This document shows, piece after piece, positions 20,387 to 63,601 of a DNA stretch of 64,000 nucleotides (the first letter of the stretch is position 1; the number at the start of each line of letters is the position of its first letter). The notes beneath the pieces are model-generated. The model was not told where the DNA came from, searched no databases, and saw only the letters and a program-made list of their open reading frames with translations. The DNA is taken from positions 124,001 to 188,000 of IMG/VR virus record IMGVR_UViG_3300050014_000823; one strand, given 5' to 3'. The translations under genes were made by a program, and so were the position numbers.

Positions 20387-20395
20387 CTATTTATA
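20387..20395 (+). promoter_or_regulatory. Phage late-type motif CTATTTATA inside the IS, upstream of tnpB
   Basis: Same motif as the structural genes, on the tnpB sense strand. Confidence 0.5.
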
Positions 20396-20427
20396 AAAGG
20401 GATTAAAAATTAACCCGTAAAACAAAA

Positions 20428-21720: not shown

Positions 21721-21755
21721 ATTTTTTTGAACGGTATTAACAGTTACAATTCCAA
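21575..21755 (+). ncRNA. Predicted omegaRNA scaffold plus guide (boundaries approximate)
   Basis: TnpB omegaRNAs overlap the 3' end of the ORF and right end, with the guide taken from the flank. This call is positional only; the RNA was not folded. Confidence 0.4.
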
Positions 21756-21802
21756 AACTTGACAAAGCCAAAGAACTAAAGACAAAAATTGAGATTAAAT
21801 AA
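21737..21802 (+). pseudogene. Hsp20, 3' part (LTVTIPKLDKAKELKTKIEIK*)
   Basis: Completes the GVLTVTIPK...IEI C-terminal motif. Confidence 0.9.
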
Positions 21803-21813
21803 CGCATGTCTCA

Positions 21814-21851
21814 AAAACAAGATGAGGTCACAAATTGTGACCTCATTTTTT
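21814..21851. terminator. Bidirectional terminator
   Basis: Stem ATGAGGTCACAA/TTGTGACCTCAT with an A-run before and a T-run after, between convergent genes. Confidence 0.8.
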
Positions 21852-27696: not shown

Positions 27697-27721
27697 ACTG
27701 TGTTTTTACTATAAATACTCA

Positions 27722-32263: not shown

Positions 32264-32296
32264 TTTATATGAATTTAATTATAAATACTAATATTT

Positions 32297-36907: not shown

Positions 36908-36938
36908 AATCTTTACATTTTACTATAAATACGATAAT

Positions 36939-43714: not shown

Positions 43715-44406
43715 TATATTATGTTTTTTAAAATTCGATTAATATTATTTATTTCGCTGTATTTTATTCTCAACAATAAGATATTTTTACTGTTGGCATA
43801 TAAATTTTTTGCTTCGTCATTACTTTGTCTTATGTTAAGTTTAGCACTACCGCCCCAATATTCGATTGGTTTAAAGTGTTGTTCTCCGTCATACTCAATA
43901 AGTATGTTTACCGTTGGTAAATAGAAATCGAATGATAGTTTATTTTTACCACAATCAGCAAATCTTTTTTCTTTAACATATTCAATCATATGCATATCCA
44001 AATATTTTTTTATTAATAATTCGCCTTTAGATAATTTACATATTGAGCAACCTTTACCGTTTAAATGACCGTTTGGTGTCTGATTGAATATGCCGTGTTC
44101 TGGACAAATTATATTAATTTTATTATGTGCATTAACGTATTCAACTAAAGAATACCCATATCTATTGTTGTGTATTAAGTTTGCTTTATCAATAAATTCA
44201 TTTAATGTTATATAATTACCAGCACATTTGGGACATCCATGATTACGTAAATGATGTTTTGGTATTTGTTCGAAAACTCCATGTTCTGCACACACTATTT
44301 TAATTCTCGAAACATTATTAACATAGTCCACTAACGAATAATCGTATTTCTCGTCATGAATTTTCTTAGCCTTTTCAATAAATTCTTCAGTGGTATATTT
44401 TTTCAT
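43714..44406 (-). CDS. Free-standing endonuclease (DUF723-like Zn repeats plus Vsr/DUF559-like nuclease), copy 1
   Basis: Two FI.KA..IH..YDYS.V.Y...I.C..HG.F.Q.P..HL..GC..C repeats; FDFYLP..N.LIEYDG.QH. Confidence 0.75.
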   Translation of the reverse strand: MKKYTTEEFIEKAKKIHDEKYDYSLVDYVNNVSRIKIVCAEHGVFEQIPKHHLRNHGCPKCAGNYITLNEFIDKANLIHNNRYGYSLVEYVNAHNKINIICPEHGIFNQTPNGHLNGKGCSICKLSKGELLIKKYLDMHMIEYVKEKRFADCGKNKLSFDFYLPTVNILIEYDGEQHFKPIEYWGGSAKLNIRQSNDEAKNLYANSKNILLLRIKYSEINNINRILKNII

Positions 44407-48779: not shown

Positions 48780-48866
48780 CTTGTGTTTATAAAATATTAT
48801 AAAATTATGCAATTAATTATAAATACGTAAAAATAGCGGAAAATCTGCCAAGTGGCAAGACATTTT

Positions 48867-49293: not shown

Positions 49294-50133
49294 TTATTTA
49301 AGTCCTTGTATTAATGTATCGCCATATTTAATGCCATCATATCCCATATGCTGTGCTTTTTCGGCAATTGCTTTATTTTTTAAGTTAATTGGTGGAACTT
49401 TATATTGTTCACCTAATTTTTCAAAGTTTACGTGCGGAAACCATGCTTTAGCAAGTACTTCTGCAGGTATTTGGCTGTCCTTATACTCGATGCCTAAGTC
49501 ATTGGTATCAAGTAAGTTTTCAAAATCAATCTGATATTTAATAAATCCTTCAACAGGTGTTAATGTAAAGAAATTTCCAATGACGGACCTTTCTTTAATT
49601 GGTTCTCTACGATACGCAATTATCGACTGGTCATTTTTGCTTGGATTTTCTGATTCAACGCCTGCATTATTTTCTTCAAGTGCTGAAAGAAATTCATTGT
49701 AGCTTACACCTGAGTTTGTTTGATTATTTGCATTAAGAACATCCTGTCCGACCACTTCTTCCATTTTCTGCACTTCGGTATAGTCATAAACGTCCTGTAT
49801 TTTATTTAAAAGTCTGCAGGCATCTTTAAATTCTAAGTCGATTTTAATTGCTGTCAACGGTAAGTTATCTGTTGTGGCAAAAACATACCGATGATGCCCG
49901 TCACAGATGGTATTTTCTTTATCAAGCCAAATTGGATTCATATCATTTGGCTTTGCTTTTTCAACATCATCAGAAAAAGTAAATCCTTGTGACACATTTA
50001 AATTTTTTAACTCTTCTGGACTAATTTGAATGTATTCATAATCAACACCCTCCTCATCGAGTTGTTTCACGACAGCATCAACAGGTGCGCTAATCTGTGG
50101 CAAATAGTACGGCTTGTGTTTCATTCTTATCAT
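49294..50133 (-). CDS. ParB/sulfiredoxin-like N-terminal domain protein
   Basis: PIWLDKENTICDGHHRYV motif. Confidence 0.6.
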   Translation of the reverse strand: MIRMKHKPYYLPQISAPVDAVVKQLDEEGVDYEYIQISPEELKNLNVSQGFTFSDDVEKAKPNDMNPIWLDKENTICDGHHRYVFATTDNLPLTAIKIDLEFKDACRLLNKIQDVYDYTEVQKMEEVVGQDVLNANNQTNSGVSYNEFLSALEENNAGVESENPSKNDQSIIAYRREPIKERSVIGNFFTLTPVEGFIKYQIDFENLLDTNDLGIEYKDSQIPAEVLAKAWFPHVNFEKLGEQYKVPPINLKNKAIAEKAQHMGYDGIKYGDTLIQGLK

Positions 50134-50873
50134 ATTACTGACAAATTTTTTAATTCACATTCTAATGCTTCTTTAACAGTGCCTAATACAGAATAAGGTA
50201 TTTTAATTAATTTATAGCCATTGTTAATAGCATAATTAATTTTAATTTTGTCACGTTTTTTTGTATCCAATAAAGCATTGTCACCACCAAAAAAATCAAC
50301 AGATTTATAATGTTGAATTCCATCGAACTCTATGAATATTTTATGTTTGGGTAGATAAAAATCATAATATAAATTCGAAACAGATTTTAAATTATTAAAT
50401 GTTACTTCACGCTCAAAGTTAATGTTGTGTTTCAACAAAATATTTGCTATTTGTTCTTCATTATGTGAAGCACGACATTTTCTACATCCATATCCATGTA
50501 AATGTGCATGGGGCGTTTGTTCAAATTTACCATGCTTATTACAAATAATCGTTATTTTGTTTTCATATCCACCATATTTTACTAACGAATAATCAAATCT
50601 ATTGCCGTGCATTTCTTTTGCTTTTTCAATAAAAGTTTCATTGGTGAACCTATTTTCTTTTGAGATTTTTTCGTATTGACATTTCTTACACCCATATCCC
50701 GTTAAATGGTCATTCGGTGTTTGCAAAAATTCTCCATGTTTAGTACAAATAATAATAACTTTATTTTTGTTGCCAACATACTCAACTTTCGAATAATCAT
50801 ATTTATCACCATGTTTATTTAGTGATTTTAATATGAATTCTCCTGTGTTTGATTTTTTTGTTGACCTAATCAT
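50130..50873 (-). CDS. Free-standing endonuclease (DUF723-like repeats plus Vsr-like domain), copy 2
   Basis: Same repeat and YDFYLPKHKIFIEFDG.QH core as copy 1; late motif at 50887-50895. Confidence 0.75.
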   Translation of the reverse strand: MIRSTKKSNTGEFILKSLNKHGDKYDYSKVEYVGNKNKVIIICTKHGEFLQTPNDHLTGYGCKKCQYEKISKENRFTNETFIEKAKEMHGNRFDYSLVKYGGYENKITIICNKHGKFEQTPHAHLHGYGCRKCRASHNEEQIANILLKHNINFEREVTFNNLKSVSNLYYDFYLPKHKIFIEFDGIQHYKSVDFFGGDNALLDTKKRDKIKINYAINNGYKLIKIPYSVLGTVKEALECELKNLSVI

Positions 50874-50896
50874 AGAATTATTTTACTATAAATACA

Positions 50897-51475
50897 TCAG
50901 ATTATAATTTTTTTTAGTTCGTCTTGAATAATGCATAATGCATTCTGACTTCGACTTGTTTCTGTCAAAGCAATAGTACCTTCAGTTGCACGATAAATAT
51001 TAAATTCAACACCCGATGGTAGTTTACTTCTGATTTCTTCGTATGCTTCAATATCAACATCACGGTCCTCATAGACGTTTATTACCTTCAAGTCTGGTAG
51101 TTGCTGTACATAACGCATAACCTTAACACCTTTGTTGCCTTCTGCACGTTTCATGTCAAATTTATCGACTTTGATTTTATTTGCATCAAGTACTGCTTCA
51201 ACTTCTGAACGTAGTTTTTCCATTCTCGATGTTAAAACAATAACATAAGTTCCGGGAGTTACAATCTCTTTTTTGAGTTGTTTTAACACACTTGGAAATG
51301 GTTTGATGTCAAAAACCTCTAAGTCCAGGCTTTCTGGTCTACCCCACCATCCACTAAATGGATATTCTTTATCCATTTTCTCCGACCATTCTTTTTTACC
51401 TGTTTCTGGCATAGGAGAATTCATAAGTGTCCCGTCAAAATCAAATACTGCTAATCTCTTAATCATAACAAACAA
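50897..51475 (-). CDS. HAD phosphatase of the RNA-repair type (Swiss-army-knife HAD-like)
   Basis: AVFDFDGTLMNSP.P (motif I), W.GWW..P.SL, VLTSR (motif II), VYEDR (motif IV). Confidence 0.75.
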   Translation of the reverse strand: MFVMIKRLAVFDFDGTLMNSPMPETGKKEWSEKMDKEYPFSGWWGRPESLDLEVFDIKPFPSVLKQLKKEIVTPGTYVIVLTSRMEKLRSEVEAVLDANKIKVDKFDMKRAEGNKGVKVMRYVQQLPDLKVINVYEDRDVDIEAYEEIRSKLPSGVEFNIYRATEGTIALTETSRSQNALCIIQDELKKIII

Positions 51476-51960
51476 TTATATTTTATTTCATTAATATTGC
51501 TTATCTCTGAGCAATACGGTGCAAATATATCTTTTTTTATTAAATAAATGTTCATTTCCTTAGTAATATTTCCTTCTTGTTGAACGCTAAAGGTTTCATA
51601 TCGAGTTTCAGGATGCTCAACAATACAATCGTGAATTCTTTGCTTCTCAATTATGTATGCTGTTTCTCCGTCTGCAATAAGCCAATAATCTGCTTTGGTA
51701 ATCAATAAACCCGACCACCTGCCATTACAGCCAACCTCAATACAAATATTGCCCGTAATATAAGACATTTCATCATACTTACATTCAAGAGTCTTTGAGG
51801 ATTTACTGAAATCTCCGTTGAAAAGAATTATGTCGTAGAAACTATAATCTTCTCTTTTCATGTTTTTGTATGCGAGAGGTAATACCTTACTATTGATATC
51901 TTCTAAGACGAATTTTTCAAAATCAAATCCTTTTGCAGATGCTTCTTTCCAACTTGGCAT
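51463..51960 (-). CDS. PD-(D/E)XK nuclease-like protein
   Basis: YDII...TLECKYD...TGNICIE...SGL..TKADYW pattern. Confidence 0.6.
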   Translation of the reverse strand: MPSWKEASAKGFDFEKFVLEDINSKVLPLAYKNMKREDYSFYDIILFNGDFSKSSKTLECKYDEMSYITGNICIEVGCNGRWSGLLITKADYWLIADGETAYIIEKQRIHDCIVEHPETRYETFSVQQEGNITKEMNIYLIKKDIFAPYCSEISNINEIKYNCLL

Positions 51961-51961
51961 A

Positions 51962-54900
51962 TTATTCTACTTCGGTTACTTTTCCTGTTAATATCAATGG
52001 TTCACTCAAATTTACCCACATGCTTAATTGATTTGACATCATTGGTTTACCACCCTGTGCACGATTTACGGCAATAGTTATATGTGGCTTCTTATTCTTT
52101 GTGAGATATTTATCCACCACCACACCAACTGCCATAACCATATCATCCATAGAAAATTCTGTGGCTTCCATAACAATAGTCATGCCCAAGAATTTCAAAT
52201 ACTCTGGAGCAATCGGACCTAAGTTCATTGTCATGTGATGTGCAATAGTTTCCCAACCTTCGGGAATCATATTACCAAGTCTCTTAAGCAATGCTGTACG
52301 GGATTTGTCATCAAGCACCACGGCAGTATATTTCACATTTTTATTCATGTCTTCGTCAAGTACTTCGTTATCAACTAATTTGTGATATAAATCGTGTTTT
52401 AATTTTTCATCATGGCTGAAATCCTCATAATTATTCTGTAAGAATTCCAATACGGATTTATCTGATGCACTTTCATATCCACCTTGATTCCACTCATAAT
52501 ATTTATCCGTAAAGAAATTAATATCAACCTGTTGTCCATTTACGTTCCAAGTAGGCTTCTCTTGACCTGTTTCAGGATAACTATATTCGTTAAGTGTAAT
52601 TGGTTCGCCTTTAACATTCTCATAATACTCCGGATAAAAATTATATTGAGGATTACGTCTTTTTGCAGCTCTTAAGAAGTCATTAACAATTTTTATGTTG
52701 TCATAATCATATTCATCTGCAGCAAAATCATAACTACTGTCAGCCAAACCGAAATCATTTGTGCTTCCAATTCTGTTTACAAGCATCCATTCAGTCAAAT
52801 AATTATACATGGCTTCTGTATCACCCTCAATAAATCCCAATGCTCTACCAATATTACCATGATTAAAATAACCGTCCTTTTGTGCAAGAAATAAATTGCC
52901 CTCTTGGTCAATTATTCCTCTGACTCCCGGACCGATATTCCGTAATGATTTAGGATTTTCATATATTGGTGACTTTTTACCATTTCTATCTCTTACCATA
53001 GCAACTGGTTCTTCTTCCTGTGCCTGTACTGCACCCCTTGCAATCACGTCTTGTTCTGCACTCTGATTTGGCATGTTAAACATCCTTTCAGCAGCTTTAT
53101 CGGCAATACTTTCATCTACACTACCGTCAAGCATAAGTTTATCGCCATCATTGCCTTTATGACCTTTCCAAGTATAAACCAATTCAGTACCGTTAAGCAT
53201 TCTGTTCTTCTCGAATGGTTTAATGTACTTCTGTCCTTCTCCGGGTTTAACATACGCAATTGTAATATGTGGATGATAATCGGGGAATGCACTTGTATGT
53301 GGTAATGCTTTCATTATCTCATTTAATTTTGTAAGTTCTGGAGATTCAACATCGAACTTAACAACATCAAACTTAGGATTACCAGTGAAAAACGATATGC
53401 CCTTAATTCCTATCTTAATTGGTTCTATCGGCATATTTTTTTCAAACAAACTAAAGCAATCTTCTGAAGTTACTTCATCGTGAAAACCATATAATATTGT
53501 AGTATGTGGTTCTGTTTCAATTCCATATCCTGGCTCGTCATAAACATCATCAGGAGAAATTATTGACGTAATTTTTGTCCAAATCGGAACGTCAAGAAAC
53601 AACATCAGACATCCATATTCTATTTTGTCCGTGGGTTTTACTTCTTCCTTAATCATTTCGCCATTTTGTTTCGCCAAAGCTAATAAATCTTCACGATTAT
53701 TCCTAACCTTATCTGCATAAACCTTTAGCAATAATGATTTTTGCATGTCGCCAATTGCCTTACCCTGTAAACCAAGTTGTGACAAATCATTACCATTAAC
53801 AGCTAATTCGTTGACAGTTTTAGGATATTTGCCCTGTTGAAATTCTTCTGAGGCTTTTTGAAGTCCCATTGGAATTATCTGACTCTGTAATGCCTGTGGA
53901 CTTAGCAGATACATATTATGTGCAATTGACCTATCGAGAACATCATGTGTTATGTCGGGTAATGTAAACGCTAATTCAAGTGCTTTAATTTCCTTATATG
54001 TTGGGATATCACCTTTGAGATTATTCTTGTAAAATTCCGAAGGACTCTGAACAGTACCAACTGCCAACAGATAAATAAATTCACCCATTGTTTTAACATC
54101 GGCAATTCTATCGCTAATCTGCTTTGGCTGTCCACCGAAAATCTGTTCATATAAGCCAGTATTCACAAGTAAATCCGCACCCATTTTCACATTACCCTTC
54201 TTGATTATCTTATCGAATTCCGTTAAAATTCTCTCTGGTGCAATTTCTTTAACCCTCTGGGCATTTTCTTTTATCATCTGCATAGTCTGTGGCTCAATTG
54301 TAAACCCGAAACGTGATGCAAATTGTACTGCACGCAACATTCTCAATGGGTCATCACTGAATGCCTGTGGATTAACAATACGAATAATTTTGTTTTTAAG
54401 GTCTTCTTGACCACCAAATGGGTCAACTATATTACCCTCTGAATCTTTTGCAATAGCATTAATTGTAAAATCCCTGCGTTCCAAGTCTTTTTCAATCGGT
54501 AGTGCATGGTCAGACTTAACATCAAAACCTTGATGACCACCTTCACCCGTAGCTGTTTCAGTACGTGGAATAGCAATGTCAATATCATCGGTAGCACCCT
54601 TTGGCTTGAATTTCAACACACCAAATGATTTACCAACAGCATCTACACGACCATATTTGCCAAGAAGTTGTTCAAGTTCTTCAAACGGCACACCAGTAAT
54701 AAGCACATCCAAATCTTTGGATTGTTTACCAAGAAATTCATCCCGGACCGCACCACCAACACTATAAATTTTACCACCAAGTTGCTCAACCTCTTGTTTG
54801 AAAGGCAAGTCTTGTAATGACATTATTTCCGCTTCGTTCATGACTGATTCTTCAAGTGCATTATCTCCATAAAAACGTATTGATTCCGCTATGAATTCCA

Positions 54901-57900
54901 TAGTCGGATTTTTTTCTTTTGCCAAAGATAAGAATTTTTCGTAATATGGCAACGCTTCTTCTCTTTTTGGTACAGTTTCCCAATAACTTGAATGAAAGTT
55001 TCTTTTTTCTTCTGGATATAACGGTGCATTTGACTCTCCAACTAAGATGATATTATCTCTTTTATATCGTTGAACAGTCAAAAAATTAGTTGGTGGGGTT
55101 TTATCCCAATGTTCCTCATTTTCAATGACTCCCAAGCTATTGAGGGTATAGAGTAATTCGAAGTGTATAACAACACTTTTTTGTTCAGTGTATAAGTTTC
55201 CTTCTTTGTCAACAACACCCCGGACATCACCCCAAATATTTTTCCAAGATTTCGGATTTTTTATTATTACCAACCCATTTTCGGGATTATTGTAAACGAT
55301 ATCTTCGGAATCCTGCTCCCTGTTGAACCTATCGTTGAATTCTGCATCAGGATTCGGAACATTAAACATTTTTTCCGCAGCAACATCCGCTACACCTTCG
55401 TCAACACTTACTGGTTCTCCTTCAATAAAAGTATAATATTCTTCATAAAACTCATATTGTGGATTTCGTCTTTTTGTGGCTTTCAATATATCAATTGCAT
55501 TGTCATAGTTATGCGCATTTGAATTAATATATCTTGAAGAAATGTCCCCCAAACCGAAATTATTTGTTAAGTCAACCCTATTAAGTAATTGATATTTATC
55601 TAATTCTGAATATATTCTTGCATCAATCGTGAATAATCCCAATGCTTTTGCTATATTACCGTGGGTAAATGAATAATCTGCTTGTGCAACATATAGATTT
55701 CCATCTGTATCTGCGATTGCCCGTACATCCCTTTGAAATCTTTCTAAGGATTTGGGATTTTTATAAATTTGACTAACTCTTCCAATGGTATCTACTACTT
55801 CTCCAACAGGTTCATTCGTATTTTTTTCTATCTCACCCTGTGCTTGAACGTCTTGTTCTGCATGTGGGTCGGGAATATTAAATGCTTTCTCAGCATATTT
55901 ATCAGCCACACCTTCCATTTGATATTTCTTACCACCCGTAGGTTTGAAATTCTTCTTAAATGCAGTGTACATCAGACTTGAAATTCTTTCAGATTCTCCT
56001 TCTTCACTGATACTCTCTGTTCTTTTTCTGAAAAGCAATTCAACTTTATTTGCAATGTCATGGGCGTTATCGTATGTATAACCATAATGCTTGATAAGAT
56101 AGCTTTCAACCCTTTCATGAAGTAAAATCCCTTCAAAGTCGTTTGGCTTTGTCAAATGTACGTCATCAACCCAAAGTTCGTCTGCTGGAATGTGCTTAGC
56201 ATATTTTTGCTGTGATTTTGGTAAGTCATAGTCAACCCAATGATTGCCACCTTCAACCCACTCAATAAAACCACTGTCACGCACTTCGTCACCATTAACT
56301 GCATAAACGGGATTGACATCAATACCGTCATTGTATGTACGGATTAATTTCTTATCCAATTCATGTGTAGTATTGTCTTTCTCAATCTGTGGTTCACTTA
56401 CAGGAAATTCTTCTTCGTGTATTGTGTTTTTCATTTTATCGAGATACTGCTCATAGTCTGTATCTTGAAATATTTCAGAAGTTTCTTCGTCTGGCTCATC
56501 GTATGCTTCTAAACCATTAATCTCATAGAAAGCATTCATTCTCTTTTTAAAATCATCAGTAATATCGACTTTGCCAATATAATGACCTTGTACTGCCCTT
56601 CTGAATCTAACTTCTTTTAAATAAGTAAAATCACCTATTTCCCAATGAGAAATGTCCGCATCGGGTTTTTCGTTTATTTCATAAACATAAAAAACTCCCG
56701 GATTTTTACCGTGTTGCATAAACATCGAATACAGTCCCATTAAAGCACCACCAACACTTTTACTTGCAGCAATTTCTGGTGTTTCACTAACCCAAAACGT
56801 ATCATACTTATATATTGGATTACCGTCATCGTCAATTGCTTCGTAATAACCTTCGGGTTCAAATTCAATCGTTTCACCCATATATTTTTCAACAGCACGA
56901 TAATATTTTTCACCACCACTTGTTACCACTTCATTTATTGCAGTATTGGGAAGTCTGTACATCAACTGCATAGTCTGGAAGTCCTTATTCCTGCCTTTGT
57001 TCATGATAAATCCCAATGATTTATACCATGCAGTTAGTTTAGACTTACTTGCGCCCCACATACTATCGGGAGTTAATGTAACAATTAATTTATTTCTGTC
57101 GGCATAGTCAAAGATAAGTTTCATTGCATCATTGGCATATCCTTTACCTCTGAATTCTTTGTTGATAAAAATTTTATCTATTGCGATGTAATGATTCTGA
57201 CCTTGAACGCCTCTGTCCATGATACCTACCTCACCAACGACTTGACCATCATCAGTTATCTTAAGCGAATCATATCCGCTTAAATTGTTTGGTAGATTAA
57301 GATTCACAGACTCTTTAATACTACCAAATGTCAAGTTGCCAATATCTCCTTGATTACAGGCAGTGCTTGTACCGTCACCATTACCACCAAGTCTGCACTT
57401 TTTCTTAACATCAACAGTTTTACTGCCAGATTGAAACGACTGAACTCTTTCTGTTATTTGAAATTCGTCTTGGGTTGCATCACCGACAACATGGTTATAT
57501 TCTAAGTCTTCGTTTACTTCACTGTTTGCGTTTAAATCGTTGCTTATTGAGGGTGAAGTGTCCATATTATTGTATGTTGGAAAATTATCTTGACCAAAAC
57601 TATTGTCTGTCGAATATAATGCTGAACCGTCTTCGTCAACTTGAACAGGTTCTGGCATATTATTAGATTTAAAAAAATAATTACCAAAACCTACATCAAA
57701 AAATCCCAAATTACCATTTGGTTTATATCCTAAGTTATTTGGATTTGTATAATCTGTACTTTCTAAGCCGTATTTTTTTACTTCTTCGCCAATTTTAAGT
57801 ATTTTATCAAAAAATTCTCTGTCTTGTGGATTTCTTGCAAAGTATTTTTGAACCTTATCTTCATCCACATTGTCATCGCCAAAACGATTGTGTATGAAAT

Positions 57901-60028
57901 GGTCAAGAACATCGCCATAGTTTGCACCCATTATTTTTTCAAACGCAAATTTCATTCTTTCAACTCTTGCAATAAAATCAGCCTTATCTGTTCTTAACTT
58001 CTCTAAGATTATCACATAAAGGTCATATCTCGTTTCGCCCGACAATGTATTAGACTTAATTGAGTAGACCTTATATGGTTGAGCAATGTATTCTAATGGT
58101 TTACCAATAAGTTCAAGATTTTCATTTGCTTCGCTTTGGTCCTTAGTAACCTTTAATACTAAATTGTTTCCTATATCATATGCATAGCCAAATACACCAT
58201 CACCAAGAGGTTTTGGCTGACCATATCCAAACTTCTGTGCTACACTATTCGCCACTTTATTAGCGACTTCTCTCGGAAATCCTGTAGGTTCTTCATTCAG
58301 TACTTCTTCACCTTCGGGTAAAGAAATTCGGTTTTCTGGTGGTAAATCCGGTACAACTACACCCATGCATCCACCTATGTCATAGTATGTTAAAATACCG
58401 TTCTTATATCCCAAATTACTGAGAGTCATATAATCGTCTGACTTAATCATCAGTGCAAGTAATTCTCTTTTAATGTCATAGAGTCCCAACATAAAACGAT
58501 ATGCCTTTTCTCTATCGCCTGCAGCAATATTAGCATCGGGATTTGCCGTTAAAATTAGTTTAGCTAATTCTGGAAAATCGTTAAATGTTTTTCCAAAAAA
58601 TTCCGTATCTTCTTTCTTAGGTTTACCTTTGATTAAAATTCTCAATAACCTACCGTATAAGTCTTCACCGAGCGAATTAATTATTTCAGTGTATCTTTCA
58701 AATTCCTGATGTGGTTTATCAACAATATTGTCTTCGATAAGCGCATAAACTGCTTTGTTTTGTTCGGTGTCAGTTACCTTATACACATTGTAAACCATTG
58801 CAAGTGTTTTAGGCTTACCCCTGCTAATTTTTAAACCAGCATCGACCTCACATGCATCAGTAGTAATTTTTAAAACCCTGTTGTTATTAACCTCATAAGC
58901 ATATCCATATCCACCACCACCAAGATATTTAATAGCACCAAGATTTAACTTCTGTGCAACCGCATTAGCAAGAGTATCAGAATATTCTCTTGGTAATTGC
59001 ATTGCTGCAACTTTTGGACTACTCTCATTTATTTCTACAGTTTCTTCCTCAAGTGGTTCTCTATCATAGAATTTACCTCTGATAAGATAGTCTTGAAGTT
59101 CCAATAAGTTACTATAAAATTTCTTTTTCTCAGGTACGTGTTCAAGTACTTCTTTAAGGTTGTTTACTACATCATGAAATTCATCGACAATATATGGAGC
59201 ACTTGGAAGTTTTGATGTTGGATATTTGTCTCTGTTGAGTACAAATGAAATAAAATCTTCATTAATTACGCCAGGTCCGTCACCTACACCGTAAGGCATA
59301 AGTCCCCACATAGCTTGTCGGGTATCAACGGCATCTTGTGGTGGTAAATCACCAAGCATATCGTCATTACCATCGGCAAAGTTATAAAGTTCATACATTT
59401 GATACTTTTGGTTTTTGCCACTATAATGAGTATCTACAACTTCATCATTTAACCCATAGTCGGTTAAAACTATTGCAGGTTTACCGTTACGCAGTACTTC
59501 TCCAAAGGTACTTGGTCTACCCATATCGCCTGAGTTTTGAGCATAGCTTGCAACAAAATCGGCTAATGAAAATGCAAATTCGTTTTTATTCCAAAAAAAT
59601 TCTTCAAGTTCGGGTGATTGTGGAAATATTTTCTTATGCCCCTTACTTAATTCTTCGGCATTCTTAAGAAACTCTTTTAAATCATTCAAACTTGGAATAC
59701 CTGTTACTTGTTTAATACGTGCTTCATTGACTTTCTTAGCCTTTTCTGCTATCAACCAAGTATCGTCATCCATAGAATCAATAACCTTTGCAAGTATATG
59801 ATGATTGCTTTCAAAATATCCTGCACCTGTCTCTGCTTCGTTTTGACCAACACCTTTGGGGTTTTTCGCAAGTTTTAATACCTTTTCACCATCAATGTCA
59901 TAAACGATTCGACCACTACCACTACCAATTCTCGGTAAGTATTGATTTGCGTACTTTATTTTTCCATTAAATGATTTAATTTTAAGGAATTCTGGTAAGA
60001 AATTCGTTTTGAATTCAGCGTATGTCAT
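51962..60028 (-). CDS. 2688-aa multi-enzyme polyprotein: 3 kinase-like domains, GNAT, ART-like, HExxE domain, 3 copies of an unknown domain, CCA-adding enzyme, 2 2H phosphoesterases
   Basis: Kinase GxGxxG/VLK/DxG x3; GNAT FRGKGYA; CCA motifs GGAVRD..DLD, RRDFTINA, DPLRMLR; 2H motif pairs HTT/HIT and HMT/HIT; late motif at 60049-60057. Confidence 0.85.
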   Translation of the reverse strand: MTYAEFKTNFLPEFLKIKSFNGKIKYANQYLPRIGSGSGRIVYDIDGEKVLKLAKNPKGVGQNEAETGAGYFESNHHILAKVIDSMDDDTWLIAEKAKKVNEARIKQVTGIPSLNDLKEFLKNAEELSKGHKKIFPQSPELEEFFWNKNEFAFSLADFVASYAQNSGDMGRPSTFGEVLRNGKPAIVLTDYGLNDEVVDTHYSGKNQKYQMYELYNFADGNDDMLGDLPPQDAVDTRQAMWGLMPYGVGDGPGVINEDFISFVLNRDKYPTSKLPSAPYIVDEFHDVVNNLKEVLEHVPEKKKFYSNLLELQDYLIRGKFYDREPLEEETVEINESSPKVAAMQLPREYSDTLANAVAQKLNLGAIKYLGGGGYGYAYEVNNNRVLKITTDACEVDAGLKISRGKPKTLAMVYNVYKVTDTEQNKAVYALIEDNIVDKPHQEFERYTEIINSLGEDLYGRLLRILIKGKPKKEDTEFFGKTFNDFPELAKLILTANPDANIAAGDREKAYRFMLGLYDIKRELLALMIKSDDYMTLSNLGYKNGILTYYDIGGCMGVVVPDLPPENRISLPEGEEVLNEEPTGFPREVANKVANSVAQKFGYGQPKPLGDGVFGYAYDIGNNLVLKVTKDQSEANENLELIGKPLEYIAQPYKVYSIKSNTLSGETRYDLYVIILEKLRTDKADFIARVERMKFAFEKIMGANYGDVLDHFIHNRFGDDNVDEDKVQKYFARNPQDREFFDKILKIGEEVKKYGLESTDYTNPNNLGYKPNGNLGFFDVGFGNYFFKSNNMPEPVQVDEDGSALYSTDNSFGQDNFPTYNNMDTSPSISNDLNANSEVNEDLEYNHVVGDATQDEFQITERVQSFQSGSKTVDVKKKCRLGGNGDGTSTACNQGDIGNLTFGSIKESVNLNLPNNLSGYDSLKITDDGQVVGEVGIMDRGVQGQNHYIAIDKIFINKEFRGKGYANDAMKLIFDYADRNKLIVTLTPDSMWGASKSKLTAWYKSLGFIMNKGRNKDFQTMQLMYRLPNTAINEVVTSGGEKYYRAVEKYMGETIEFEPEGYYEAIDDDGNPIYKYDTFWVSETPEIAASKSVGGALMGLYSMFMQHGKNPGVFYVYEINEKPDADISHWEIGDFTYLKEVRFRRAVQGHYIGKVDITDDFKKRMNAFYEINGLEAYDEPDEETSEIFQDTDYEQYLDKMKNTIHEEEFPVSEPQIEKDNTTHELDKKLIRTYNDGIDVNPVYAVNGDEVRDSGFIEWVEGGNHWVDYDLPKSQQKYAKHIPADELWVDDVHLTKPNDFEGILLHERVESYLIKHYGYTYDNAHDIANKVELLFRKRTESISEEGESERISSLMYTAFKKNFKPTGGKKYQMEGVADKYAEKAFNIPDPHAEQDVQAQGEIEKNTNEPVGEVVDTIGRVSQIYKNPKSLERFQRDVRAIADTDGNLYVAQADYSFTHGNIAKALGLFTIDARIYSELDKYQLLNRVDLTNNFGLGDISSRYINSNAHNYDNAIDILKATKRRNPQYEFYEEYYTFIEGEPVSVDEGVADVAAEKMFNVPNPDAEFNDRFNREQDSEDIVYNNPENGLVIIKNPKSWKNIWGDVRGVVDKEGNLYTEQKSVVIHFELLYTLNSLGVIENEEHWDKTPPTNFLTVQRYKRDNIILVGESNAPLYPEEKRNFHSSYWETVPKREEALPYYEKFLSLAKEKNPTMEFIAESIRFYGDNALEESVMNEAEIMSLQDLPFKQEVEQLGGKIYSVGGAVRDEFLGKQSKDLDVLITGVPFEELEQLLGKYGRVDAVGKSFGVLKFKPKGATDDIDIAIPRTETATGEGGHQGFDVKSDHALPIEKDLERRDFTINAIAKDSEGNIVDPFGGQEDLKNKIIRIVNPQAFSDDPLRMLRAVQFASRFGFTIEPQTMQMIKENAQRVKEIAPERILTEFDKIIKKGNVKMGADLLVNTGLYEQIFGGQPKQISDRIADVKTMGEFIYLLAVGTVQSPSEFYKNNLKGDIPTYKEIKALELAFTLPDITHDVLDRSIAHNMYLLSPQALQSQIIPMGLQKASEEFQQGKYPKTVNELAVNGNDLSQLGLQGKAIGDMQKSLLLKVYADKVRNNREDLLALAKQNGEMIKEEVKPTDKIEYGCLMLFLDVPIWTKITSIISPDDVYDEPGYGIETEPHTTILYGFHDEVTSEDCFSLFEKNMPIEPIKIGIKGISFFTGNPKFDVVKFDVESPELTKLNEIMKALPHTSAFPDYHPHITIAYVKPGEGQKYIKPFEKNRMLNGTELVYTWKGHKGNDGDKLMLDGSVDESIADKAAERMFNMPNQSAEQDVIARGAVQAQEEEPVAMVRDRNGKKSPIYENPKSLRNIGPGVRGIIDQEGNLFLAQKDGYFNHGNIGRALGFIEGDTEAMYNYLTEWMLVNRIGSTNDFGLADSSYDFAADEYDYDNIKIVNDFLRAAKRRNPQYNFYPEYYENVKGEPITLNEYSYPETGQEKPTWNVNGQQVDINFFTDKYYEWNQGGYESASDKSVLEFLQNNYEDFSHDEKLKHDLYHKLVDNEVLDEDMNKNVKYTAVVLDDKSRTALLKRLGNMIPEGWETIAHHMTMNLGPIAPEYLKFLGMTIVMEATEFSMDDMVMAVGVVVDKYLTKNKKPHITIAVNRAQGGKPMMSNQLSMWVNLSEPLILTGKVTEVE

Positions 60029-60069
60029 GCCAACATTATTAAGTTATTAATAAATACAAACTTGATTAT

Positions 60070-60097
60070 AAAAAGAAAGGACATCTTACTGTCCTTT
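60070..60097 (-). terminator. Rho-independent terminator
   Basis: Stem AAAGGACA/TGTCCTTT overlapping the 60086 stop. Confidence 0.65.
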
Positions 60098-62077: not shown

Positions 62078-62118
62078 TTTATTTTGTTTTATATCTCAAT
62101 TATTTACTATAAATACAA

Positions 62119-62904
62119 TTAATCGTACTTTTTAAACGATAATGTTATGTATTCAATCAAATTTGGTACAATGTCCAGGTAATGCATTTCATCCACATCA
62201 TACCAACCATAGTTTGTGTTTTCGGCATTATCTAACTCAATTTCAGTTGGGTCGCCCTCATATCGACAAGCAAAAACTGTTTCAATGCTCTCAGGATTCC
62301 TTTGTATTGTGAAGGTCCTGACAAACTTATTAATTTCCAACCCAATTTCTTCAAGTATCTCTCTCTCAATAGCACGCTGTGGAGTTTCACCCTTCTCAAT
62401 AGCACCACCAACCAATGCCCATTTCTCCGGCATCCAAGGTGCTTCTTTGCCTCTTTTCAACAGTAAAATCTTATTGTCGTTATTTACAATAACTGCAACG
62501 GCATTTTTTTGTTTTTCTTCTTTCTTCTCTTTCTTTTCTTCATTCAGTGTTGGCATGGGACTATTCGGCATTAATTCTGAATTAGGATTTGATGTCATAT
62601 CCTGCTTGGTTTCTTTTGACCTTGCCACACCTGCTCTATCTTGTGCTAATGAAGTTTCAATAAACTGTCTCATTGCTTCCCCACCAGCAAGGGCATATTG
62701 TGTTTTATCATCAGTCTGTGGATTAAAATAATCAAAGAAGTTTTTAAGTCTTTTCATTGCTTGATATGTTAAATTACCGTTCTTAAGAATGAAATTAGCA
62801 CGTTTAAGACCATTTTCATTCGAAGTGGATGCTTTAGCCACCGCAATACCATTAAGTACATTTGAGGGTATCCTATATGTCTTATCTTTGAGATATTGGT
62901 TCAT
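62119..62904 (-). CDS. NUDIX hydrolase fused to an N-terminal helical domain
   Basis: Nudix box GGAIEKGETPQRAIEREILEEIGL; TLNEE linker. Confidence 0.85.
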   Translation of the reverse strand: MNQYLKDKTYRIPSNVLNGIAVAKASTSNENGLKRANFILKNGNLTYQAMKRLKNFFDYFNPQTDDKTQYALAGGEAMRQFIETSLAQDRAGVARSKETKQDMTSNPNSELMPNSPMPTLNEEKKEKKEEKQKNAVAVIVNNDNKILLLKRGKEAPWMPEKWALVGGAIEKGETPQRAIEREILEEIGLEINKFVRTFTIQRNPESIETVFACRYEGDPTEIELDNAENTNYGWYDVDEMHYLDIVPNLIEYITLSFKKYD

Positions 62905-63601
62905 ATGCTTCTAAGATTTTGTTTATTCTGTTGATTTGGTCAAACTTTATTCTCAATAGAAAGTAGTTGTTTGATTCTGCAAAAGTATTTTTTATTTCAT
63001 CGTTAATTTTCTGGATTCTAAACTTATCAAGTCCACCGAAATGGTTATTAGCTATAAAGTGTTGTGCACCATCAAACTCTATTAATACGTTGTTCTCTGG
63101 AAGAAAAAAATCGAATGCAAGTTTATTTATATTTTTACAGTCATTAAATTTTTTCTCTCTTTCAAAAGCAATTGAATTATTTATTAAATATTTTGCAATC
63201 TCTCTTTCTCCGATAGATTCTGTACAACTGGGACAACCACATCCTTTTAAATGAGTATTTGGTTTTTGATTAAATTTTCCATGAATCGGACATAATATTT
63301 CTACATAAATATGTGCTGTTATATAGTTAACATTAGAATAATCATATCTATCTCCGTGAATTTCTTTTGCTTTAGTAATAAAATAATCAGTATTTTTTCT
63401 TAATTTCATTTTACCACACAATGGACAACCACAACCCTCTAAATGAGTATTTACTCGCTGTATGAATTCGCCATGTGTGGGACATGATATGATAATATTA
63501 TCGTGTGTATGTTTAAAATCAACCAAATCATACTCATAATAATTATTGTGCACAGCATTTGCTTTAGCAATAAACGCATCTATAGTTAATATCCTTGCCA
63601 T
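62882..63601 (-). CDS. Free-standing endonuclease (DUF723-like repeats plus Vsr-like domain), copy 3
   Basis: Same repeats and FDFFLPENNVLIEFDGAQH core; overlaps both neighbours. Confidence 0.75.
   Translation of the reverse strand: MARILTIDAFIAKANAVHNNYYEYDLVDFKHTHDNIIISCPTHGEFIQRVNTHLEGCGCPLCGKMKLRKNTDYFITKAKEIHGDRYDYSNVNYITAHIYVEILCPIHGKFNQKPNTHLKGCGCPSCTESIGEREIAKYLINNSIAFEREKKFNDCKNINKLAFDFFLPENNVLIEFDGAQHFIANNHFGGLDKFRIQKINDEIKNTFAESNNYFLLRIKFDQINRINKILEAYEPISQR

What the first reader, a model, noticed from the sequence alone, without database searches (positions are those of the whole stretch)
51962..60028. 2688-aa multi-enzyme polyprotein with protease-site-like junctions: candidate virion-packaged anti-host payload
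SEEN: one uninterrupted ORF strings together about 14 separable domains. In order: kinase-like 1, helical domain, kinase-like 2 and 3, GNAT, ART-like, HExxE domain, unknown repeat x2, CCA-adding enzyme, 2H #1, unknown repeat #3, small domain, 2H #2. Nearly every junction has a hydrophobic-x-Glu motif (VINE, EINE, VLNE, QVDE, SIKE, AINE, TIHE, YQME, SVDE, VMNE, MIKE, SVDE, TLNE, VLDE). The gene has the putative late-promoter motif. KNOWN: T4 prohead protease gp21 cleaves after Glu in (I/L)-x-E, and large phages inject head-packaged enzymes such as T4 Alt. INFERENCE: a precursor is packaged into the capsid, cut into individual enzymes at maturation and injected to modify host proteins, destroy signalling nucleotides and repair tRNA. 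I am not aware of this combination being described as one protein, but I cannot check the literature here.
Basis: partly seen in the sequence, partly recalled or inferred. Interest (0 to 1): 0.93.

Follow-up and report, generated by a model that had tools for sequence, protein, structure and literature searches.

The report
Cleavable multi-enzyme polyprotein of jumbo phage
An uncultured 300-kb phage encodes a 2,688-residue protein of at least 16 independent modules (three kinase-like domains, an acetyltransferase, a tRNA CCA-adding enzyme, two 2H phosphoesterases, several unknown folds), and every joint carries a conserved cut-after-glutamate motif, so it is probably chopped into separate enzymes, most likely in the phage head before injection.

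Summary
The ORF is real: minus strand 51962-60028, 2688 aa, identical in two assemblies. It belongs to a family of more than 130 giant proteins found only on jumbo-phage contigs.

"ART-like" is not supported.

In this sequence alone the hydrophobic-x-Glu motif is not enriched (71 sites against 63±6.5 shuffled; linkers p=0.38). Comparison with relatives shows it is real:
- Modules are shuffled among relatives (104 architectures in 120 proteins).
- 74-80% of module ends finish exactly in [ILVMF]-x-E, against 2.9% at random positions. This holds when the neighbouring module differs or is unknown.
- The junctions fall in low-confidence AlphaFold linkers.
- Genes split exactly at these junctions.
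- Stand-alone copies of modules carry short N-terminal leaders ending in Glu. Some match the T4 capsid-targeting sequence.

This is a "polyvalent protein" (Iyer et al. 2017), here with explicit T4-gp21-type cleavage sites and a CCA-adding core. Packaging, cleavage and injection remain inferred, because no protease or head gene lies in the accessible DNA.

Verdict: new variant of a known kind. Reader partly supported.

Novelty: the reader's belief that the idea is undescribed is wrong in general. Polyvalent proteins with 2-15 disparate domains, predicted to be packaged, processed and injected, were described in 2017 (PMC5512222). A CCA-adding enzyme is not mentioned there.

The parts
51962..60028 (-). 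Whole ORF: 2688-aa polyvalent polyprotein. The stop codon is at 51962-51964.
59990..60028 (-). Residues 1-13: an N-terminal leader-like peptide (M-T-Y-A-E-F...L-P-E). It shares T-Y-x-E-F with the T4 IPII/IPIII capsid-targeting sequence. L-P-E at 11-13 is kept as hydrophobic-x-E in 51% of relatives.
   Evidence: In the model it is a helix packed on the kinase-like domain, so a leader role is only a hypothesis.
59420..60028 (-). Residues 1-203: kinase-like domain 1. It has a Gly-rich loop, Lys52, Glu66, Asp168 and Asp190-Tyr-Gly, all nearly invariant.
   Evidence: Stand-alone homologues occur in Xanthomonas jumbo phages.
59258..59419 (-). Residues 204-257: a strongly conserved segment that is predicted to be disordered. 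It ends in V-I-N-E (junction 1). Some relatives start their protein here.
59024..59257 (-). Residues 258-335: a small helical module ending in E-I-N-E (junction 2).
58292..59023 (-). Residues 336-579: kinase-like domain 2. It ends in S-L-P-E (572, 100% conserved), then a 7-residue spacer, then V-L-N-E (579, junction 3).
57632..58291 (-). Residues 580-799: kinase-like domain 3, a paralogue of domain 2. It ends in Q-V-D-E; Glu799 is invariant (junction 4).
57509..57631 (-).
57311..57508 (-). Residues 841-906: a small module with two nearly invariant Cys (878, 891). It is present in 118 of 120 relatives, sometimes twice, and ends in S-I-K-E (junction 6). The constant N-terminal region ends here.
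56930..57310 (-). Residues 907-1033: GNAT acetyltransferase ending in A-I-N-E (junction 7).
56414..56929 (-). It also occurs as a stand-alone protein with an N-terminal leader.
55913..56413 (-). Residues 1206-1372: the H-E-x-x-E module. Its topology is one helix, three strands and two long helices. It ends in Y-Q-M-E (junction 9; relatives have F-x-N-E or L-N-E here).
55397..55912 (-). Residues 1373-1544: repeat module, copy 1. It starts G-V-A-D-K-Y-A-E and ends S-V-D-E (junction 10). The alpha/beta model is confident but has no PDB match.
54833..55396 (-). Residues 1545-1732: repeat module, copy 2, ending in V-M-N-E (junction 11).
53645..54832 (-). Residues 1733-2128: class II CCA-adding enzyme (tRNA nucleotidyltransferase) with the motifs G-G-A-V-R-D and D-L-D. 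It ends in M-I-K-E (junction 12) and is present in 113 of 120 relatives.
53111..53644 (-). Residues 2129-2306: 2H phosphoesterase 1, with two H-x-T motifs. It ends in S-V-D-E (junction 13).
52586..53110 (-). Residues 2307-2481: repeat module, copy 3, ending in T-L-N-E (junction 14).
52352..52585 (-). Residues 2482-2559: a small conserved module of unknown function (in 73 of 120 relatives), ending in V-L-D-E (junction 15).
51965..52351 (-). Residues 2560-2688: 2H phosphoesterase 2 (PF08302, 23.5 bits; motifs H-M-T and H-I-T). In many relatives it is a separate gene that starts exactly at this boundary.
60049..60056 (-). Promoter-like octamer T-A-T-T-T-A-T-T. It is a 7-of-8 variant of the motif G-TATTTATA-GTAAA that precedes about 10 other genes in the window.
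60076..60097 (-). Terminator-like hairpin plus T-run, between the upstream gene and this ORF.
50897..51475 (-). Downstream HAD phosphatase gene with the D-F-D-G-T motif and a weak HAD_SAK_1 match. The same domain is fused to the C-terminus of relative P0120.

Best explanation
The ORF encodes a polyvalent polyprotein of an uncultured jumbo myovirus of about 300 kb.

Architecture:
- A constant N-terminal region (residues 1-906) holds three minimal kinase-like domains plus small conserved modules.
- A variable cassette region follows, built around a CCA-adding enzyme. In this member it holds GNAT, an unknown module, an H-E-x-x-E module, three copies of a novel repeat module, two 2H phosphoesterases and a small module.
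- Each module is an autonomous unit.
- Each junction carries a conserved [I/L/V/M]-x-Glu site in a flexible linker.

Proposed mechanism:
1. The precursor is made from its own promoter-like signal.
2. It is taken into the prohead, possibly through its T4-CTS-like N-terminus or the constant region.
3. A Glu-specific prohead protease of T4 gp21 type cuts it after each junction Glu into about 16 separate proteins.
4. These proteins are ejected with the DNA.
5. In the host, the kinases and GNAT modify host proteins. The CCA-adding enzyme, the 2H domains and the neighbouring HAD phosphatase heal tRNA 3' ends, or possibly degrade cyclic nucleotide signals.

What is shown and what is inferred:
- Shown: the ORF, the module identities, modularity, conservation and placement of the junction motif, gene splits at the junctions, and leaders on stand-alone modules.
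- Inferred: cleavage, the identity of the protease, packaging, injection and the targets.
For: 1. Family and modularity. There are 136 relatives of 1480-3198 aa on contigs up to 357 kb and 97 IMG/VR loci. Among 185,579 species genomes the only hit is one mis-binned 363-kb contig. The 120 listed relatives show 104 architectures.

2. Junction motif.
- BLAST homology breakpoints pile up at the junctions.
- Module ends finish exactly in [ILVMF]-x-E in 80% of 569 unique instances, and in 74% when the downstream sequence differs. The rate at random positions is 2.9%. P3 is hydrophobic in 0.89, P1 is Glu in 0.82, and P2 is Asn in 0.40.
- Known modules that follow unknown modules are still preceded by the motif: 71% exactly, 92% within 3 residues.
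- In the N-terminal alignment, junction sites are conserved at 0.87 against 0.45 for internal sites of the same pattern (p=0.02), and Glu799 is invariant.
- Codons at the 15 junctions differ, so the constraint acts on the protein.

3. Accessibility. Regions with pLDDT below 50 are 204-253, 329-336, 572-582 and 799-866, plus 1366-1377 in the second model. Six of the seven junctions inside the two models lie in or within four residues of these regions; the seventh, 906, is the last residue of model 1 and cannot be judged.

4. Autonomy. Relatives split the gene at junctions, and solo 2H genes start exactly at the module start. The repeat module and module 1034-1205 also exist as stand-alone proteins.

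5. Targeting and cleavage signature.
- T4 IPII/IPIII begin M-K-T-Y-Q-E-F-I-A-E|A. The family begins M-T-Y-x-E-F.
- Solo kinase-like proteins of Xanthomonas jumbo phages begin ...T-F-S-Q-F-L-T-E|A.
- Solo repeat proteins carry leaders of 5-26 aa that end in Glu directly before G-V-A-D-K-Y-A-E.
- In locus L090, 6 of 18 small genes examined, one of the two solo ART-PolyVal genes among them, have leaders matching the T4 CTS pattern. The background rate is 0.002.

6. Literature. T4 gp21 cleaves after L/I-x-E, and the CTS loads diverse proteins into heads (PMC9026906). Giant-phage proteases cleave after A-x-E (PMC10052503). Polyvalent proteins are predicted to be packaged and processed (PMC5512222). 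Relatives carry PF18760 ART-PolyVal above the Pfam threshold.
Against: - No prohead protease, capsid, portal or scaffold gene is in the window or within ±10 kb of the gene in 80 loci. The remaining ~235 kb of the contig could not be read.
- The gene sits between replication genes (DNA polymerase B and NUDIX in relatives) and baseplate genes. It is not in a head module and is not fused to MuF or portal.
- In many relatives the CCA/2H half is a separate gene lacking the constant N-terminal region. Those enzymes can therefore work without being co-packaged.
- The N-terminal 'leader' is modelled as a helix packed on the kinase-like domain (pLDDT 95), and its L-P-E is kept in only 51% of relatives.
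- Several internal hydrophobic-x-E sites are as conserved as the junctions (95, 102, 293, 676).
- The motif is not enriched in this sequence alone.
- No proteomic data exist for any member.
Confidence: 0.55

Rival explanations
1. The protein is a cytoplasmic multi-enzyme precursor. It is made during infection and is not packaged. A Glu-specific protease other than the prohead protease (phage or host) cuts it at the junctions. The fusion serves only for co-expression and fixed stoichiometry of takeover and RNA-repair enzymes.
For: - The CCA/2H half is a separate gene in many relatives.
- Phage CCA-adding enzymes are usually ordinary non-virion genes.
- The gene lies next to replication and nucleotide-metabolism genes.
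- No head gene is nearby.
Against: - The motif matches the prohead-protease specificity of T4 (PMC9026906).
- Stand-alone modules carry T4-CTS-like leaders that end in Glu.
- No other protease candidate is present in the constant region.
Confidence: 0.22
2. There is no cleavage. The protein acts full length as a 'Swiss-army-knife' enzyme. The hydrophobic-x-Glu motif is then a structural end-cap of modules, or a signature left by cassette exchange, like the boundary motifs of polymorphic toxins.
For: - Module shuffling is extreme: 104 architectures in 120 proteins.
- Some packaged polyvalent proteins, such as N4 vRNAP, stay unprocessed (PMC5512222).
- Conserved internal sites of the same pattern exist.
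Against: - Nine nucleotides with varying codons are too short and too variable to guide recombination.
- The motif lies in disordered linkers, not inside folds.
- Unrelated folds all end in it.
- Solo proteins keep a Glu exactly before the mature module start, after a dispensable leader.
Confidence: 0.15
3. The protein processes itself through its own H-E-x-x-E module (1206-1372), acting as a zincin-like metallopeptidase. This is the route proposed for polyvalent proteins in general.
For: - The module has the zincin topology of helix, three strands and two helices, with H-E-x-x-E in the first long helix.
- There are weak BFVD matches to small phage proteins, one of them named SprT-like (probability 0.6-0.77).
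- Iyer et al. report MPTase as the commonest polyvalent domain.
Against: - The module is present in only 31 of 120 relatives, while the junction motif is universal.
- The second metal-binding His of H-E-x-x-H is Glu.
- There is no PDB match and no Pfam match.
- Zincins are not known for P1-Glu specificity (my own knowledge).
Confidence: 0.05
4. The long ORF is an assembly artefact that fuses separate genes.
For: Some relatives do have the region as several genes.
Against: - The 8,064-nt coding sequence is identical on two contigs from two samples.
- More than 100 independent assemblies carry uninterrupted ORFs of 1500-3200 aa with the same junctions.
Confidence: 0.01

Closest known systems
Polyvalent proteins of phages and conjugative elements (Iyer, Burroughs, Anand, de Souza, Aravind 2017, PMC5512222)
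   Same: - Many enzymatic domains of unrelated chemistry sit in one phage polypeptide.
- The same domain types occur: kinase lacking the C-lobe (noted there for Bacteroidetes phages), GNAT and 2H.
- Relatives carry Pfam ART-PolyVal.
- Architectures are highly variable.
- Packaging, processing and injection are predicted.
   Different: - This protein has 16 or more modules, at or above their reported maximum of 15.
- The core is a CCA-adding enzyme, which that paper does not mention.
- There is no H-E-x-x-H MPTase, MuF or portal fusion.
- Processing sites are explicit, conserved hydrophobic-x-Glu motifs at every junction. This points to a prohead-type protease rather than the zincin peptidase they favour.
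- There is a constant N-terminal region and a variable C-terminal region.
T4 internal head proteins IPI-III and Alt: capsid-targeting sequence plus gp21 cleavage at L/I-x-E (PMC9026906)
   Same: - The cleavage-site pattern is the same.
- The N-terminus shares T-Y-x-E-F with the CTS.
- Stand-alone modules in related phages have CTS-like leaders ending in hydrophobic-x-E.
- The cargo is host-takeover enzymes.
   Different: - T4 loads separate small proteins, each with its own leader. Here up to 16 cargoes are strung on one chain with internal sites.
- No gp21 homologue has been found yet.
- The phage is only distantly related to T4: no T4 head homologue was detected in the window.
Ejection and inner-body proteins of phiKZ, 201phi2-1 and SPN3US, cleaved by gp175/gp245 (PMC10052503, PMC5694885)
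   Same: - These are jumbo phages.
- Many head-packaged proteins are ejected.
- Cleavage occurs after Glu at a three-residue motif.
- Propeptides are cut at several sites.
   Different: - Their motif is A/S/G-x-E, not hydrophobic-x-E.
- Cleavage there removes propeptides and does not separate functional enzymes.
- There is no sequence relationship.
Polyproteins of RNA viruses cut by 3C-like proteases after Gln or Glu
   Same: One translation product carries several enzymes, separated at short conserved sites with Glu at P1.
   Different: - Those polyproteins carry their own protease and encode replication proteins.
- Here no protease domain is recognisable in the chain, and the cargo is effectors.
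- The likeness is an analogy only.
Phage RNA-repair sets: CCA-adding enzyme, 2H phosphoesterase and 'Swiss-army-knife' HAD phosphatase (PMC7824862)
   Same: The CCA-adding enzyme, two 2H domains and a neighbouring (in relatives, fused) HAD_SAK_1 phosphatase form a plausible pathway for healing tRNA 3' ends.
   Different: - No RNA ligase or polynucleotide kinase was seen in the locus.
- The enzymes are fused to kinases and GNAT.
- Described jumbo-phage CCA enzymes are stand-alone proteins.

Membership tests
Polyvalent proteins (Iyer et al. 2017) | Two or more domains with unrelated biochemical activities in one polypeptide | tested here: met
   Kinase-like fold; GNAT, CCA-adding enzyme and 2H; second 2H
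Polyvalent proteins (Iyer et al. 2017) | Encoded by a phage, plasmid or conjugative element | tested here: met
   The window holds baseplate, tail-fibre, endolysin, SbcCD-like and primase genes. It comes from a 299-kb IMG/VR contig. The family is absent from cellular genomes except one mis-binned contig.
Polyvalent proteins (Iyer et al. 2017) | Shares the family's characteristic domains (ART-PolyVal, kinase without C-lobe, GNAT, 2H) | tested here: met
   This protein has GNAT, 2H and minimal kinase-like domains. PF18760 ART-PolyVal scores above the gathering cut-off in relatives P0076, P0113, P0114, P0120 and P0091, but not in this protein.
Polyvalent proteins (Iyer et al. 2017) | Zincin-like H-E-x-x-H metallopeptidase as the processing domain (found in about 36% of members) | tested here: inconclusive
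   Module 1206-1372 has H-E-x-x-E and a zincin-like topology. It has only weak BFVD matches, no PDB hit and no Pfam hit.
Polyvalent proteins (Iyer et al. 2017) | Located near late or virion genes, or fused to MuF or portal | tested here: inconclusive
   Baseplate genes lie about 8-10 kb downstream, while NUDIX and DNA polymerase lie upstream. There is no MuF, portal or head gene.
Polyvalent proteins (Iyer et al. 2017) | Delivered into the host together with the DNA | not testable with these tools
   This needs virion proteomics or an infection assay.
T4-type head internal proteins (CTS plus gp21 processing) | Cleavage sites L/I-x-E in accessible regions | tested here: met
   Fourteen of 15 junctions fit. 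They are conserved in relatives and lie in linkers with low pLDDT.
T4-type head internal proteins (CTS plus gp21 processing) | N-terminal capsid-targeting sequence with aromatic residues at positions 4 and 7, followed by a cleavage site | tested here: inconclusive
   T-Y-x-E-F is shared with T4 IPII/III. But the following L-P-E is kept in only 51% of relatives, and the peptide is modelled as part of the domain. Clear CTS-like leaders occur on stand-alone modules elsewhere.
T4-type head internal proteins (CTS plus gp21 processing) | An S77 (gp21-like) prohead protease in the same genome | not testable with these tools
   None is in the 64-kb window or in ±10 kb of 80 loci.
Class II CCA-adding enzyme (tRNA nucleotidyltransferase) | PolyA_pol head domain with catalytic carboxylates, plus the RNA-binding neck | tested here: met
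   PF01743 at 83 bits and PF12627 at 60.7 bits; phrog_2244 at E 1.8e-67; motifs G-G-A-V-R-D and D-L-D are visible.
2H phosphoesterase superfamily | Two H-x-T/S motifs in a 2H fold | tested here: met
   Module 2129-2306: PF13563 at 28.2 bits (cut-off 27), motifs H-T-T and H-I-T. Module 2560-2688: PF08302 at 23.5 bits (cut-off 23), motifs H-M-T and H-I-T.
Acb1 anti-CBASS phosphodiesterase | Match to PF23474 above the gathering score | tested here: not met
   The match scores 21.7 bits against a cut-off of 27. Some relatives list PF23474.
ADP-ribosyltransferase (for module 1034-1205) | Recognisable ART profile or relationship to ART-PolyVal | tested here: not met
   No Pfam hit at E≤5. hhalign against the family's own ART-PolyVal modules gives probability 0.3%.
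Protein-kinase-like fold | Kinase/APH fold with a Gly-rich loop, a beta-3 Lys, and catalytic and D-x-G Asp residues | tested here: met
   Foldseek matches APH(2''), p38 and IRAK4 at E 3.5e-5 to 1e-3. A PDB profile search hits a minimal effector kinase at E 0.003. The motif residues are nearly invariant. Domains 2 and 3 are paralogues (hhalign 100%), and domain 1 is remote (E 4e-5).

The most novel reading that the evidence does not exclude
These jumbo phages may have turned the T4-style 'targeting peptide plus Glu-specific prohead protease' system into a general cargo train. Any enzyme module bracketed by hydrophobic-x-Glu could be spliced into one precursor, carried into the capsid by a constant N-terminal region, cut loose at maturation, and injected. 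That would be a polyprotein strategy for pre-made effectors in a dsDNA phage. Over 100 cargo combinations are already visible. The cargo would include an injected tRNA CCA-repair kit and at least one enzyme-sized fold (the threefold repeat module) with no known structural relative.
Probability: 0.4. Interest if true: 0.8.

Novelty: new variant of a known kind. Interest (0 to 1): 0.62.

Why it matters
- **Testable cut sites.** If the junction motifs are real cleavage sites, this family gives the polyvalent-protein hypothesis its first explicit processing sites, about 15 in one chain. That hypothesis has rested on domain architecture alone.
- **A different processing enzyme.** The sites point to the head-maturation protease rather than an internal zincin peptidase.
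- **A catalogue of candidate injected effectors.** The family would be a ready-parsed list of modules that phages may inject. It includes three divergent minimal kinases, a CCA-adding enzyme whose pre-loading would pre-empt tRNA-targeting defences, and several confident but unmatched folds.
- **A possible engineering tool.** The leader plus cleavage-site grammar could be reused to load foreign proteins into phage capsids, as was done with the T4 CTS.

Tried and rejected
It was not significant: 71 sites against 63±6.5 in shuffles, linkers p=0.38, stricter motif p=0.13. I replaced it with comparative tests.
2. **Search for the protease and head genes.** phmmer with T4 gp16-gp23 found nothing in the window or in any ORF of the 80 loci. 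PHROGs on about 40 window ORFs found none. The annotated region of the nearest cultured relative, Flavobacterium phage immuto, was uninformative.
3. **Leaders on split CCA genes.** I thought split-off CCA genes had acquired their own targeting leader. Their N-termini instead align to the start of the CCA module, so I dropped the idea.
4. **CTS-like leaders on other window genes.** There was one strict match (51463-51960), against 0.24 expected. This is not convincing.
5. **ART identity of module 1034-1205.** It has no Pfam hit, hhalign probability is 0.3%, and its stand-alone homologues are unannotated.
6. **Structure search for the H-E-x-x-E and repeat modules.** There was no PDB hit at E<0.8 and nothing from a PDB profile search. 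BFVD gave only weak hits.
7. **Alignments with full-length homologues.** They were too large or misplaced the fragments. I rebuilt them from DNA sub-ranges.
8. **XacN1 virion proteome.** The paper and its one supplementary file held as text do not report ORF170 among the virion proteins.
9. **An error of my own.** I first cut module 3 at residue 589 instead of 579. This was corrected from then on. It affects only 5 instances.


Full report
**1. The object**

The window has a single uninterrupted ORF on the minus strand, 51962..60028, of 2688 codons. It is not an assembly accident. The same 8,064 nt occur on two IMG/VR contigs from two samples, one of 299,144 bp, which is the source of the window. 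A word-indexed search of about 5.8 billion proteins found 136 relatives of 1480-3198 aa, on contigs up to 357 kb. A pattern scan of IMG/VR confirmed 97 encoding loci. Among 185,579 species genomes the only hit is a 362,763-bp contig filed as a Paceibacterota MAG; it is the same contig as an IMG/VR phage contig.

The window is clearly phage DNA. It holds baseplate wedge, tail fibre, endolysin, SbcCD-like nuclease, primase, sigma factor, dCMP deaminase and several HNH endonucleases. It has no close relative among 50,697 deposited phage genomes. The baseplate protein is about 27% identical to those of Flavobacterium phage immuto, a Microcystis phage and an uncultured 484-kb phage.

**2. Domain content**

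Pfam and PHROGs find three things directly:
- a GNAT at 925-1007;
- a complete class II CCA-adding enzyme at 1754-1964, with a weak tail domain to about 2118;
- a 2H phosphoesterase at 2172-2265.

The last 129 residues reach the cut-off of PF08302, another 2H family. Both 2H modules show the two H-x-T motifs.

I predicted residues 1-906 with a 42-sequence alignment built from related loci (pLDDT 78). The model shows three domains with the same strand-and-helix order and a helical module between the first and second. Foldseek matches aminoglycoside 2''-phosphotransferases and eukaryotic protein kinases (E 3.5e-5, probability 1.0). A profile search of PDB sequences hits a minimal effector kinase (E 0.003). 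The Gly-rich loop, the Lys, the helix-C Glu and the two Asp residues are nearly invariant. Domains 2 and 3 are paralogues, and domain 1 is a remote relative.

Residues 1206-1544 were predicted from a 40-row alignment (pLDDT 83).
- The H-E-x-x-E module has a helix, three strands and two long helices. This is the zincin topology described in PMC5512222. It has no PDB match and only weak matches to small phage proteins, one named SprT-like.
- The repeat module is a confident alpha/beta fold (pLDDT mostly above 90) with no structural relative at E<0.8.

It is unrelated at profile level to the real ART-PolyVal modules that relatives carry (hhalign 0.3%). Its fold was not tested.

- residues 204-257, which are nearly invariant in places yet predicted disordered;
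- residues 800-840;
- residues 841-906, which carry two invariant Cys.

**3. The junction motif**

In this protein alone the motif is unremarkable. There are 71 [ILVMF]-x-E sites against 63±6.5 in shuffles, and no enrichment in linkers with low pLDDT (p=0.38). Comparison with relatives changes the picture.

- **Breakpoints.** BLAST homology breakpoints of 119 relatives pile up at the proposed junctions, plus one more at about 840.
- **Module ends.** I cut the protein after each junction Glu and searched each piece against the relatives. The predicted module ends finish exactly in [ILVMF]-x-E in 80% of 569 unique instances. The figure is 74% of the 396 instances whose next eight residues are unrelated to ours, and 2.9% at random positions. 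P3 is hydrophobic in 89%, P1 is Glu in 82%, and P2 is Asn in 40%.
- **Unknown neighbours.** In 80 independent loci, modules that follow a module absent from our protein are still preceded by the motif: 71% exactly, 92% within three residues. Modules I never defined therefore also end this way.
- **Junction versus internal sites.** In the N-terminal alignment, junction sites keep the motif in 87% of sequences against 45% for internal sites of the same pattern (p=0.02). Glu799 is invariant.
- **Codons.** The codons differ between junctions. The constraint is on the protein, not on a DNA recombination site.
- **Linkers.** Six of the seven junctions inside the two models lie in or within four residues of segments with pLDDT below 50. 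The seventh, 906, is the last residue of model 1 and cannot be judged.
- **Possible extra sites.** Conserved sites at 213, 572 (S-L-P-E, 100%) and 860 may be additional cleavage sites.

**4. Modularity**

The 120 listed relatives show 104 different module orders. Modules 1-6 and the CCA enzyme are nearly constant, and the rest are variable. About 21% of residues belong to modules not present here.

In many relatives the gene is split, and the splits respect the junctions. Solo 2H genes begin exactly at the start of the last module. The commonest split lies just before the CCA module, often with an extra ORF inserted between the halves, whose identity was not tested. The HAD phosphatase gene downstream of our ORF is fused to the polyprotein in relative P0120.

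**5. Evidence bearing on packaging**

T4 gp21 cuts after L/I-x-E. T4 loads its internal proteins through a 10-residue N-terminal capsid-targeting sequence (CTS), in which residues 4 and 7 matter for targeting and residues 8 and 10 for cleavage (PMC9026906).

- I fetched the T4 record; IPII and IPIII begin M-K-T-Y-Q-E-F-I-A-E|A. The polyprotein family begins M-T-Y-[D/A/E/N]-E-F.
- The only cultured homologues of the N-terminal region are stand-alone proteins of 206-215 aa in Xanthomonas jumbo phages Xoo-sp13 and XacN1. They begin ...T-F-S-Q-F-L-T-E|A.
- Stand-alone copies of the repeat module carry leaders of 5-26 residues that end in Glu directly before the G-V-A-D-K-Y-A-E start. That start is the same one seen after the junctions in the polyprotein. 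One leader type (M-K-N-L-K-T-F-E-D-F-K-Q-L-E|G) resembles the polyprotein N-terminus.
- In the contig that encodes one of these solo copies, a run of small genes includes two solo ART-PolyVal genes. Six of the 18 genes examined, one ART-PolyVal gene among them, have leaders fitting the T4 CTS pattern. The background rate is 0.002 per N-terminus.
- A stand-alone copy of module 1034-1205 has a second leader type, shared with other solo repeat proteins.

So unrelated modules of this family, when encoded alone, carry removable-looking leaders of the T4 kind. This is the strongest indirect argument that the modules are head cargo.

**6. Evidence against, and gaps**

- No protease, capsid, scaffold or portal gene lies in the window or near the gene in 80 loci. 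I could not read the rest of the contig.
- The gene lies between replication genes and baseplate genes, not in a head module.
- Split relatives show that the CCA/2H half can exist without the constant region.
- The N-terminal peptide is modelled as part of the kinase-like domain.
- The upstream 'late promoter' is a 7-of-8 variant of a motif (G-TATTTATA-GTAAA). In its perfect form the motif occurs 22 times on the strand matching the genes and 4 times on the other, 13-38 nt before about 10 start codons. One of those genes is an HNH endonuclease, and the timing of the motif is unknown.
- A terminator-like hairpin separates the ORF from the gene upstream.

**7. Comparison with what is known**

The object fits the 'polyvalent proteins' of Iyer et al. 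2017: 2-15 disparate domains, a third of them in phages, predicted to be packaged, processed and injected. Their listed domain types include kinases lacking the C-terminal lobe in Bacteroidetes phages, GNAT and 2H.

It differs from that description in five ways:
- It is built around a CCA-adding enzyme, which that paper does not mention. Only the 2021 jumbo-phage review contains both 'polyvalent protein' and 'tRNA nucleotidyltransferase', and it treats them separately.
- It has a constant N-terminal region and a variable C-terminal region.
- It has 16 or more modules.
- It lacks an H-E-x-x-H peptidase, MuF or portal fusion.
- It has explicit hydrophobic-x-Glu sites at every junction, which implicate a T4-type head protease.

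Giant-phage proteases also cut after Glu, but at A-x-E, and they remove propeptides rather than separate enzymes (PMC10052503).

**8. Verdict**

I rate the finding a new variant of a known kind. It rests on a well-supported new detail (conserved junction cleavage motifs) and an unproven mechanism (packaging and injection).

Noticed in passing
window 20428-21720 (+), within the low-GC stretch 20001-22000: This is the only large plus-strand gene in the window. It is a 430-aa transposase (phrog_506, E 3e-114) in a region of 28.6% GC with reversed GC and AT skew. It looks like an insertion element inside the phage genome.
   Followed up: no
window 43714-44406, 50130-50873, 62882-63601 (all -); also 37899-38555: Three paralogous HNH endonuclease genes (phrog_559, E about 1e-60) and a fourth HNH-like gene are scattered through the window.
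   Followed up: no
related loci, e.g. L042:13345-14166, L032:13470-14411, L028:12527-13132: In related phages an extra ORF sits exactly where the polyprotein gene is split, before the CCA module. The upstream half ends a few residues past the junction motif. This pattern is typical of gene splitting by a free-standing homing endonuclease, but I did not test what the inserted ORFs are.
   Followed up: partly
window, e.g. 3350-3357, 12260-12267, 27710-27717, 32280-32287, 36924-36931, 48818-48825, 50887-50894, 62108-62115: The motif G-TATTTATA-GTAAA (read on the coding strand) lies 13-38 nt upstream of about 10 start codons. The octamer occurs 22 times in the gene orientation and 4 times in the other. 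It is a candidate phage promoter, and a phage sigma factor is encoded at 21850-22533.
   Followed up: partly
window 59258-59419 and 57311-57631 (protein residues 204-257 and 800-906): These segments have many nearly invariant residues (for example G-N-D-D, W241, P245, two Cys at 878 and 891), yet AlphaFold predicts disorder. They may fold only on a partner, such as a scaffold or capsid interior. Module 841-906 occurs twice in some relatives.
   Followed up: partly
L090:4119-15155 (ENA ERZ27250602 k141_1076969) and L091: A different phage contig carries a run of small genes, two of them solo ART-PolyVal genes and one a solo repeat-module gene. Six of them have N-terminal leaders that match the T4 capsid-targeting pattern and end in hydrophobic-x-E. 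The arrangement resembles the variable internal-protein locus of T4-like phages.
   Followed up: partly
L088:5995-6615 (Xanthomonas phage Xoo-sp13 gene 166) and L089:1414-2061 (XacN1 ORF170): Cultured Xanthomonas jumbo phages encode a stand-alone homologue of kinase-like domain 1, annotated as hypothetical. Its N-terminus resembles the T4 targeting sequence and ends in L-T-E or L-S-E followed by Ala. It is a candidate packaged kinase that could be tested in a cultured system.
   Followed up: partly
L087 (JBAZIW010000001.1, 362,763 bp): A contig deposited as a Candidatus Paceibacterota MAG has the same length and coordinates as a jumbo-phage contig in IMG/VR (L029). Relative P0120 is likewise named as a Dehalococcoidia MAG protein. 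Both are probably binning errors.
   Followed up: no
window 51463-51960 (-): This is the 165-aa gene immediately downstream of the polyprotein, conserved in that position in relatives. It is the only other window ORF whose N-terminus fits the strict CTS-like pattern (...F-E-K-F-V-L-E|D at residues 14-20). With 0.24 matches expected by chance, this may be coincidence.
   Followed up: partly
BFVD entry A0A1P8DIV4_1: This is the only significant structural match of the H-E-x-x-E plus repeat model (E 1.5e-3, probability 1.0, 235 aligned columns, 21% identity). It is an unnamed 1019-residue piece of a viral protein, possibly another polyvalent protein from a catalogued virus.
   Followed up: no
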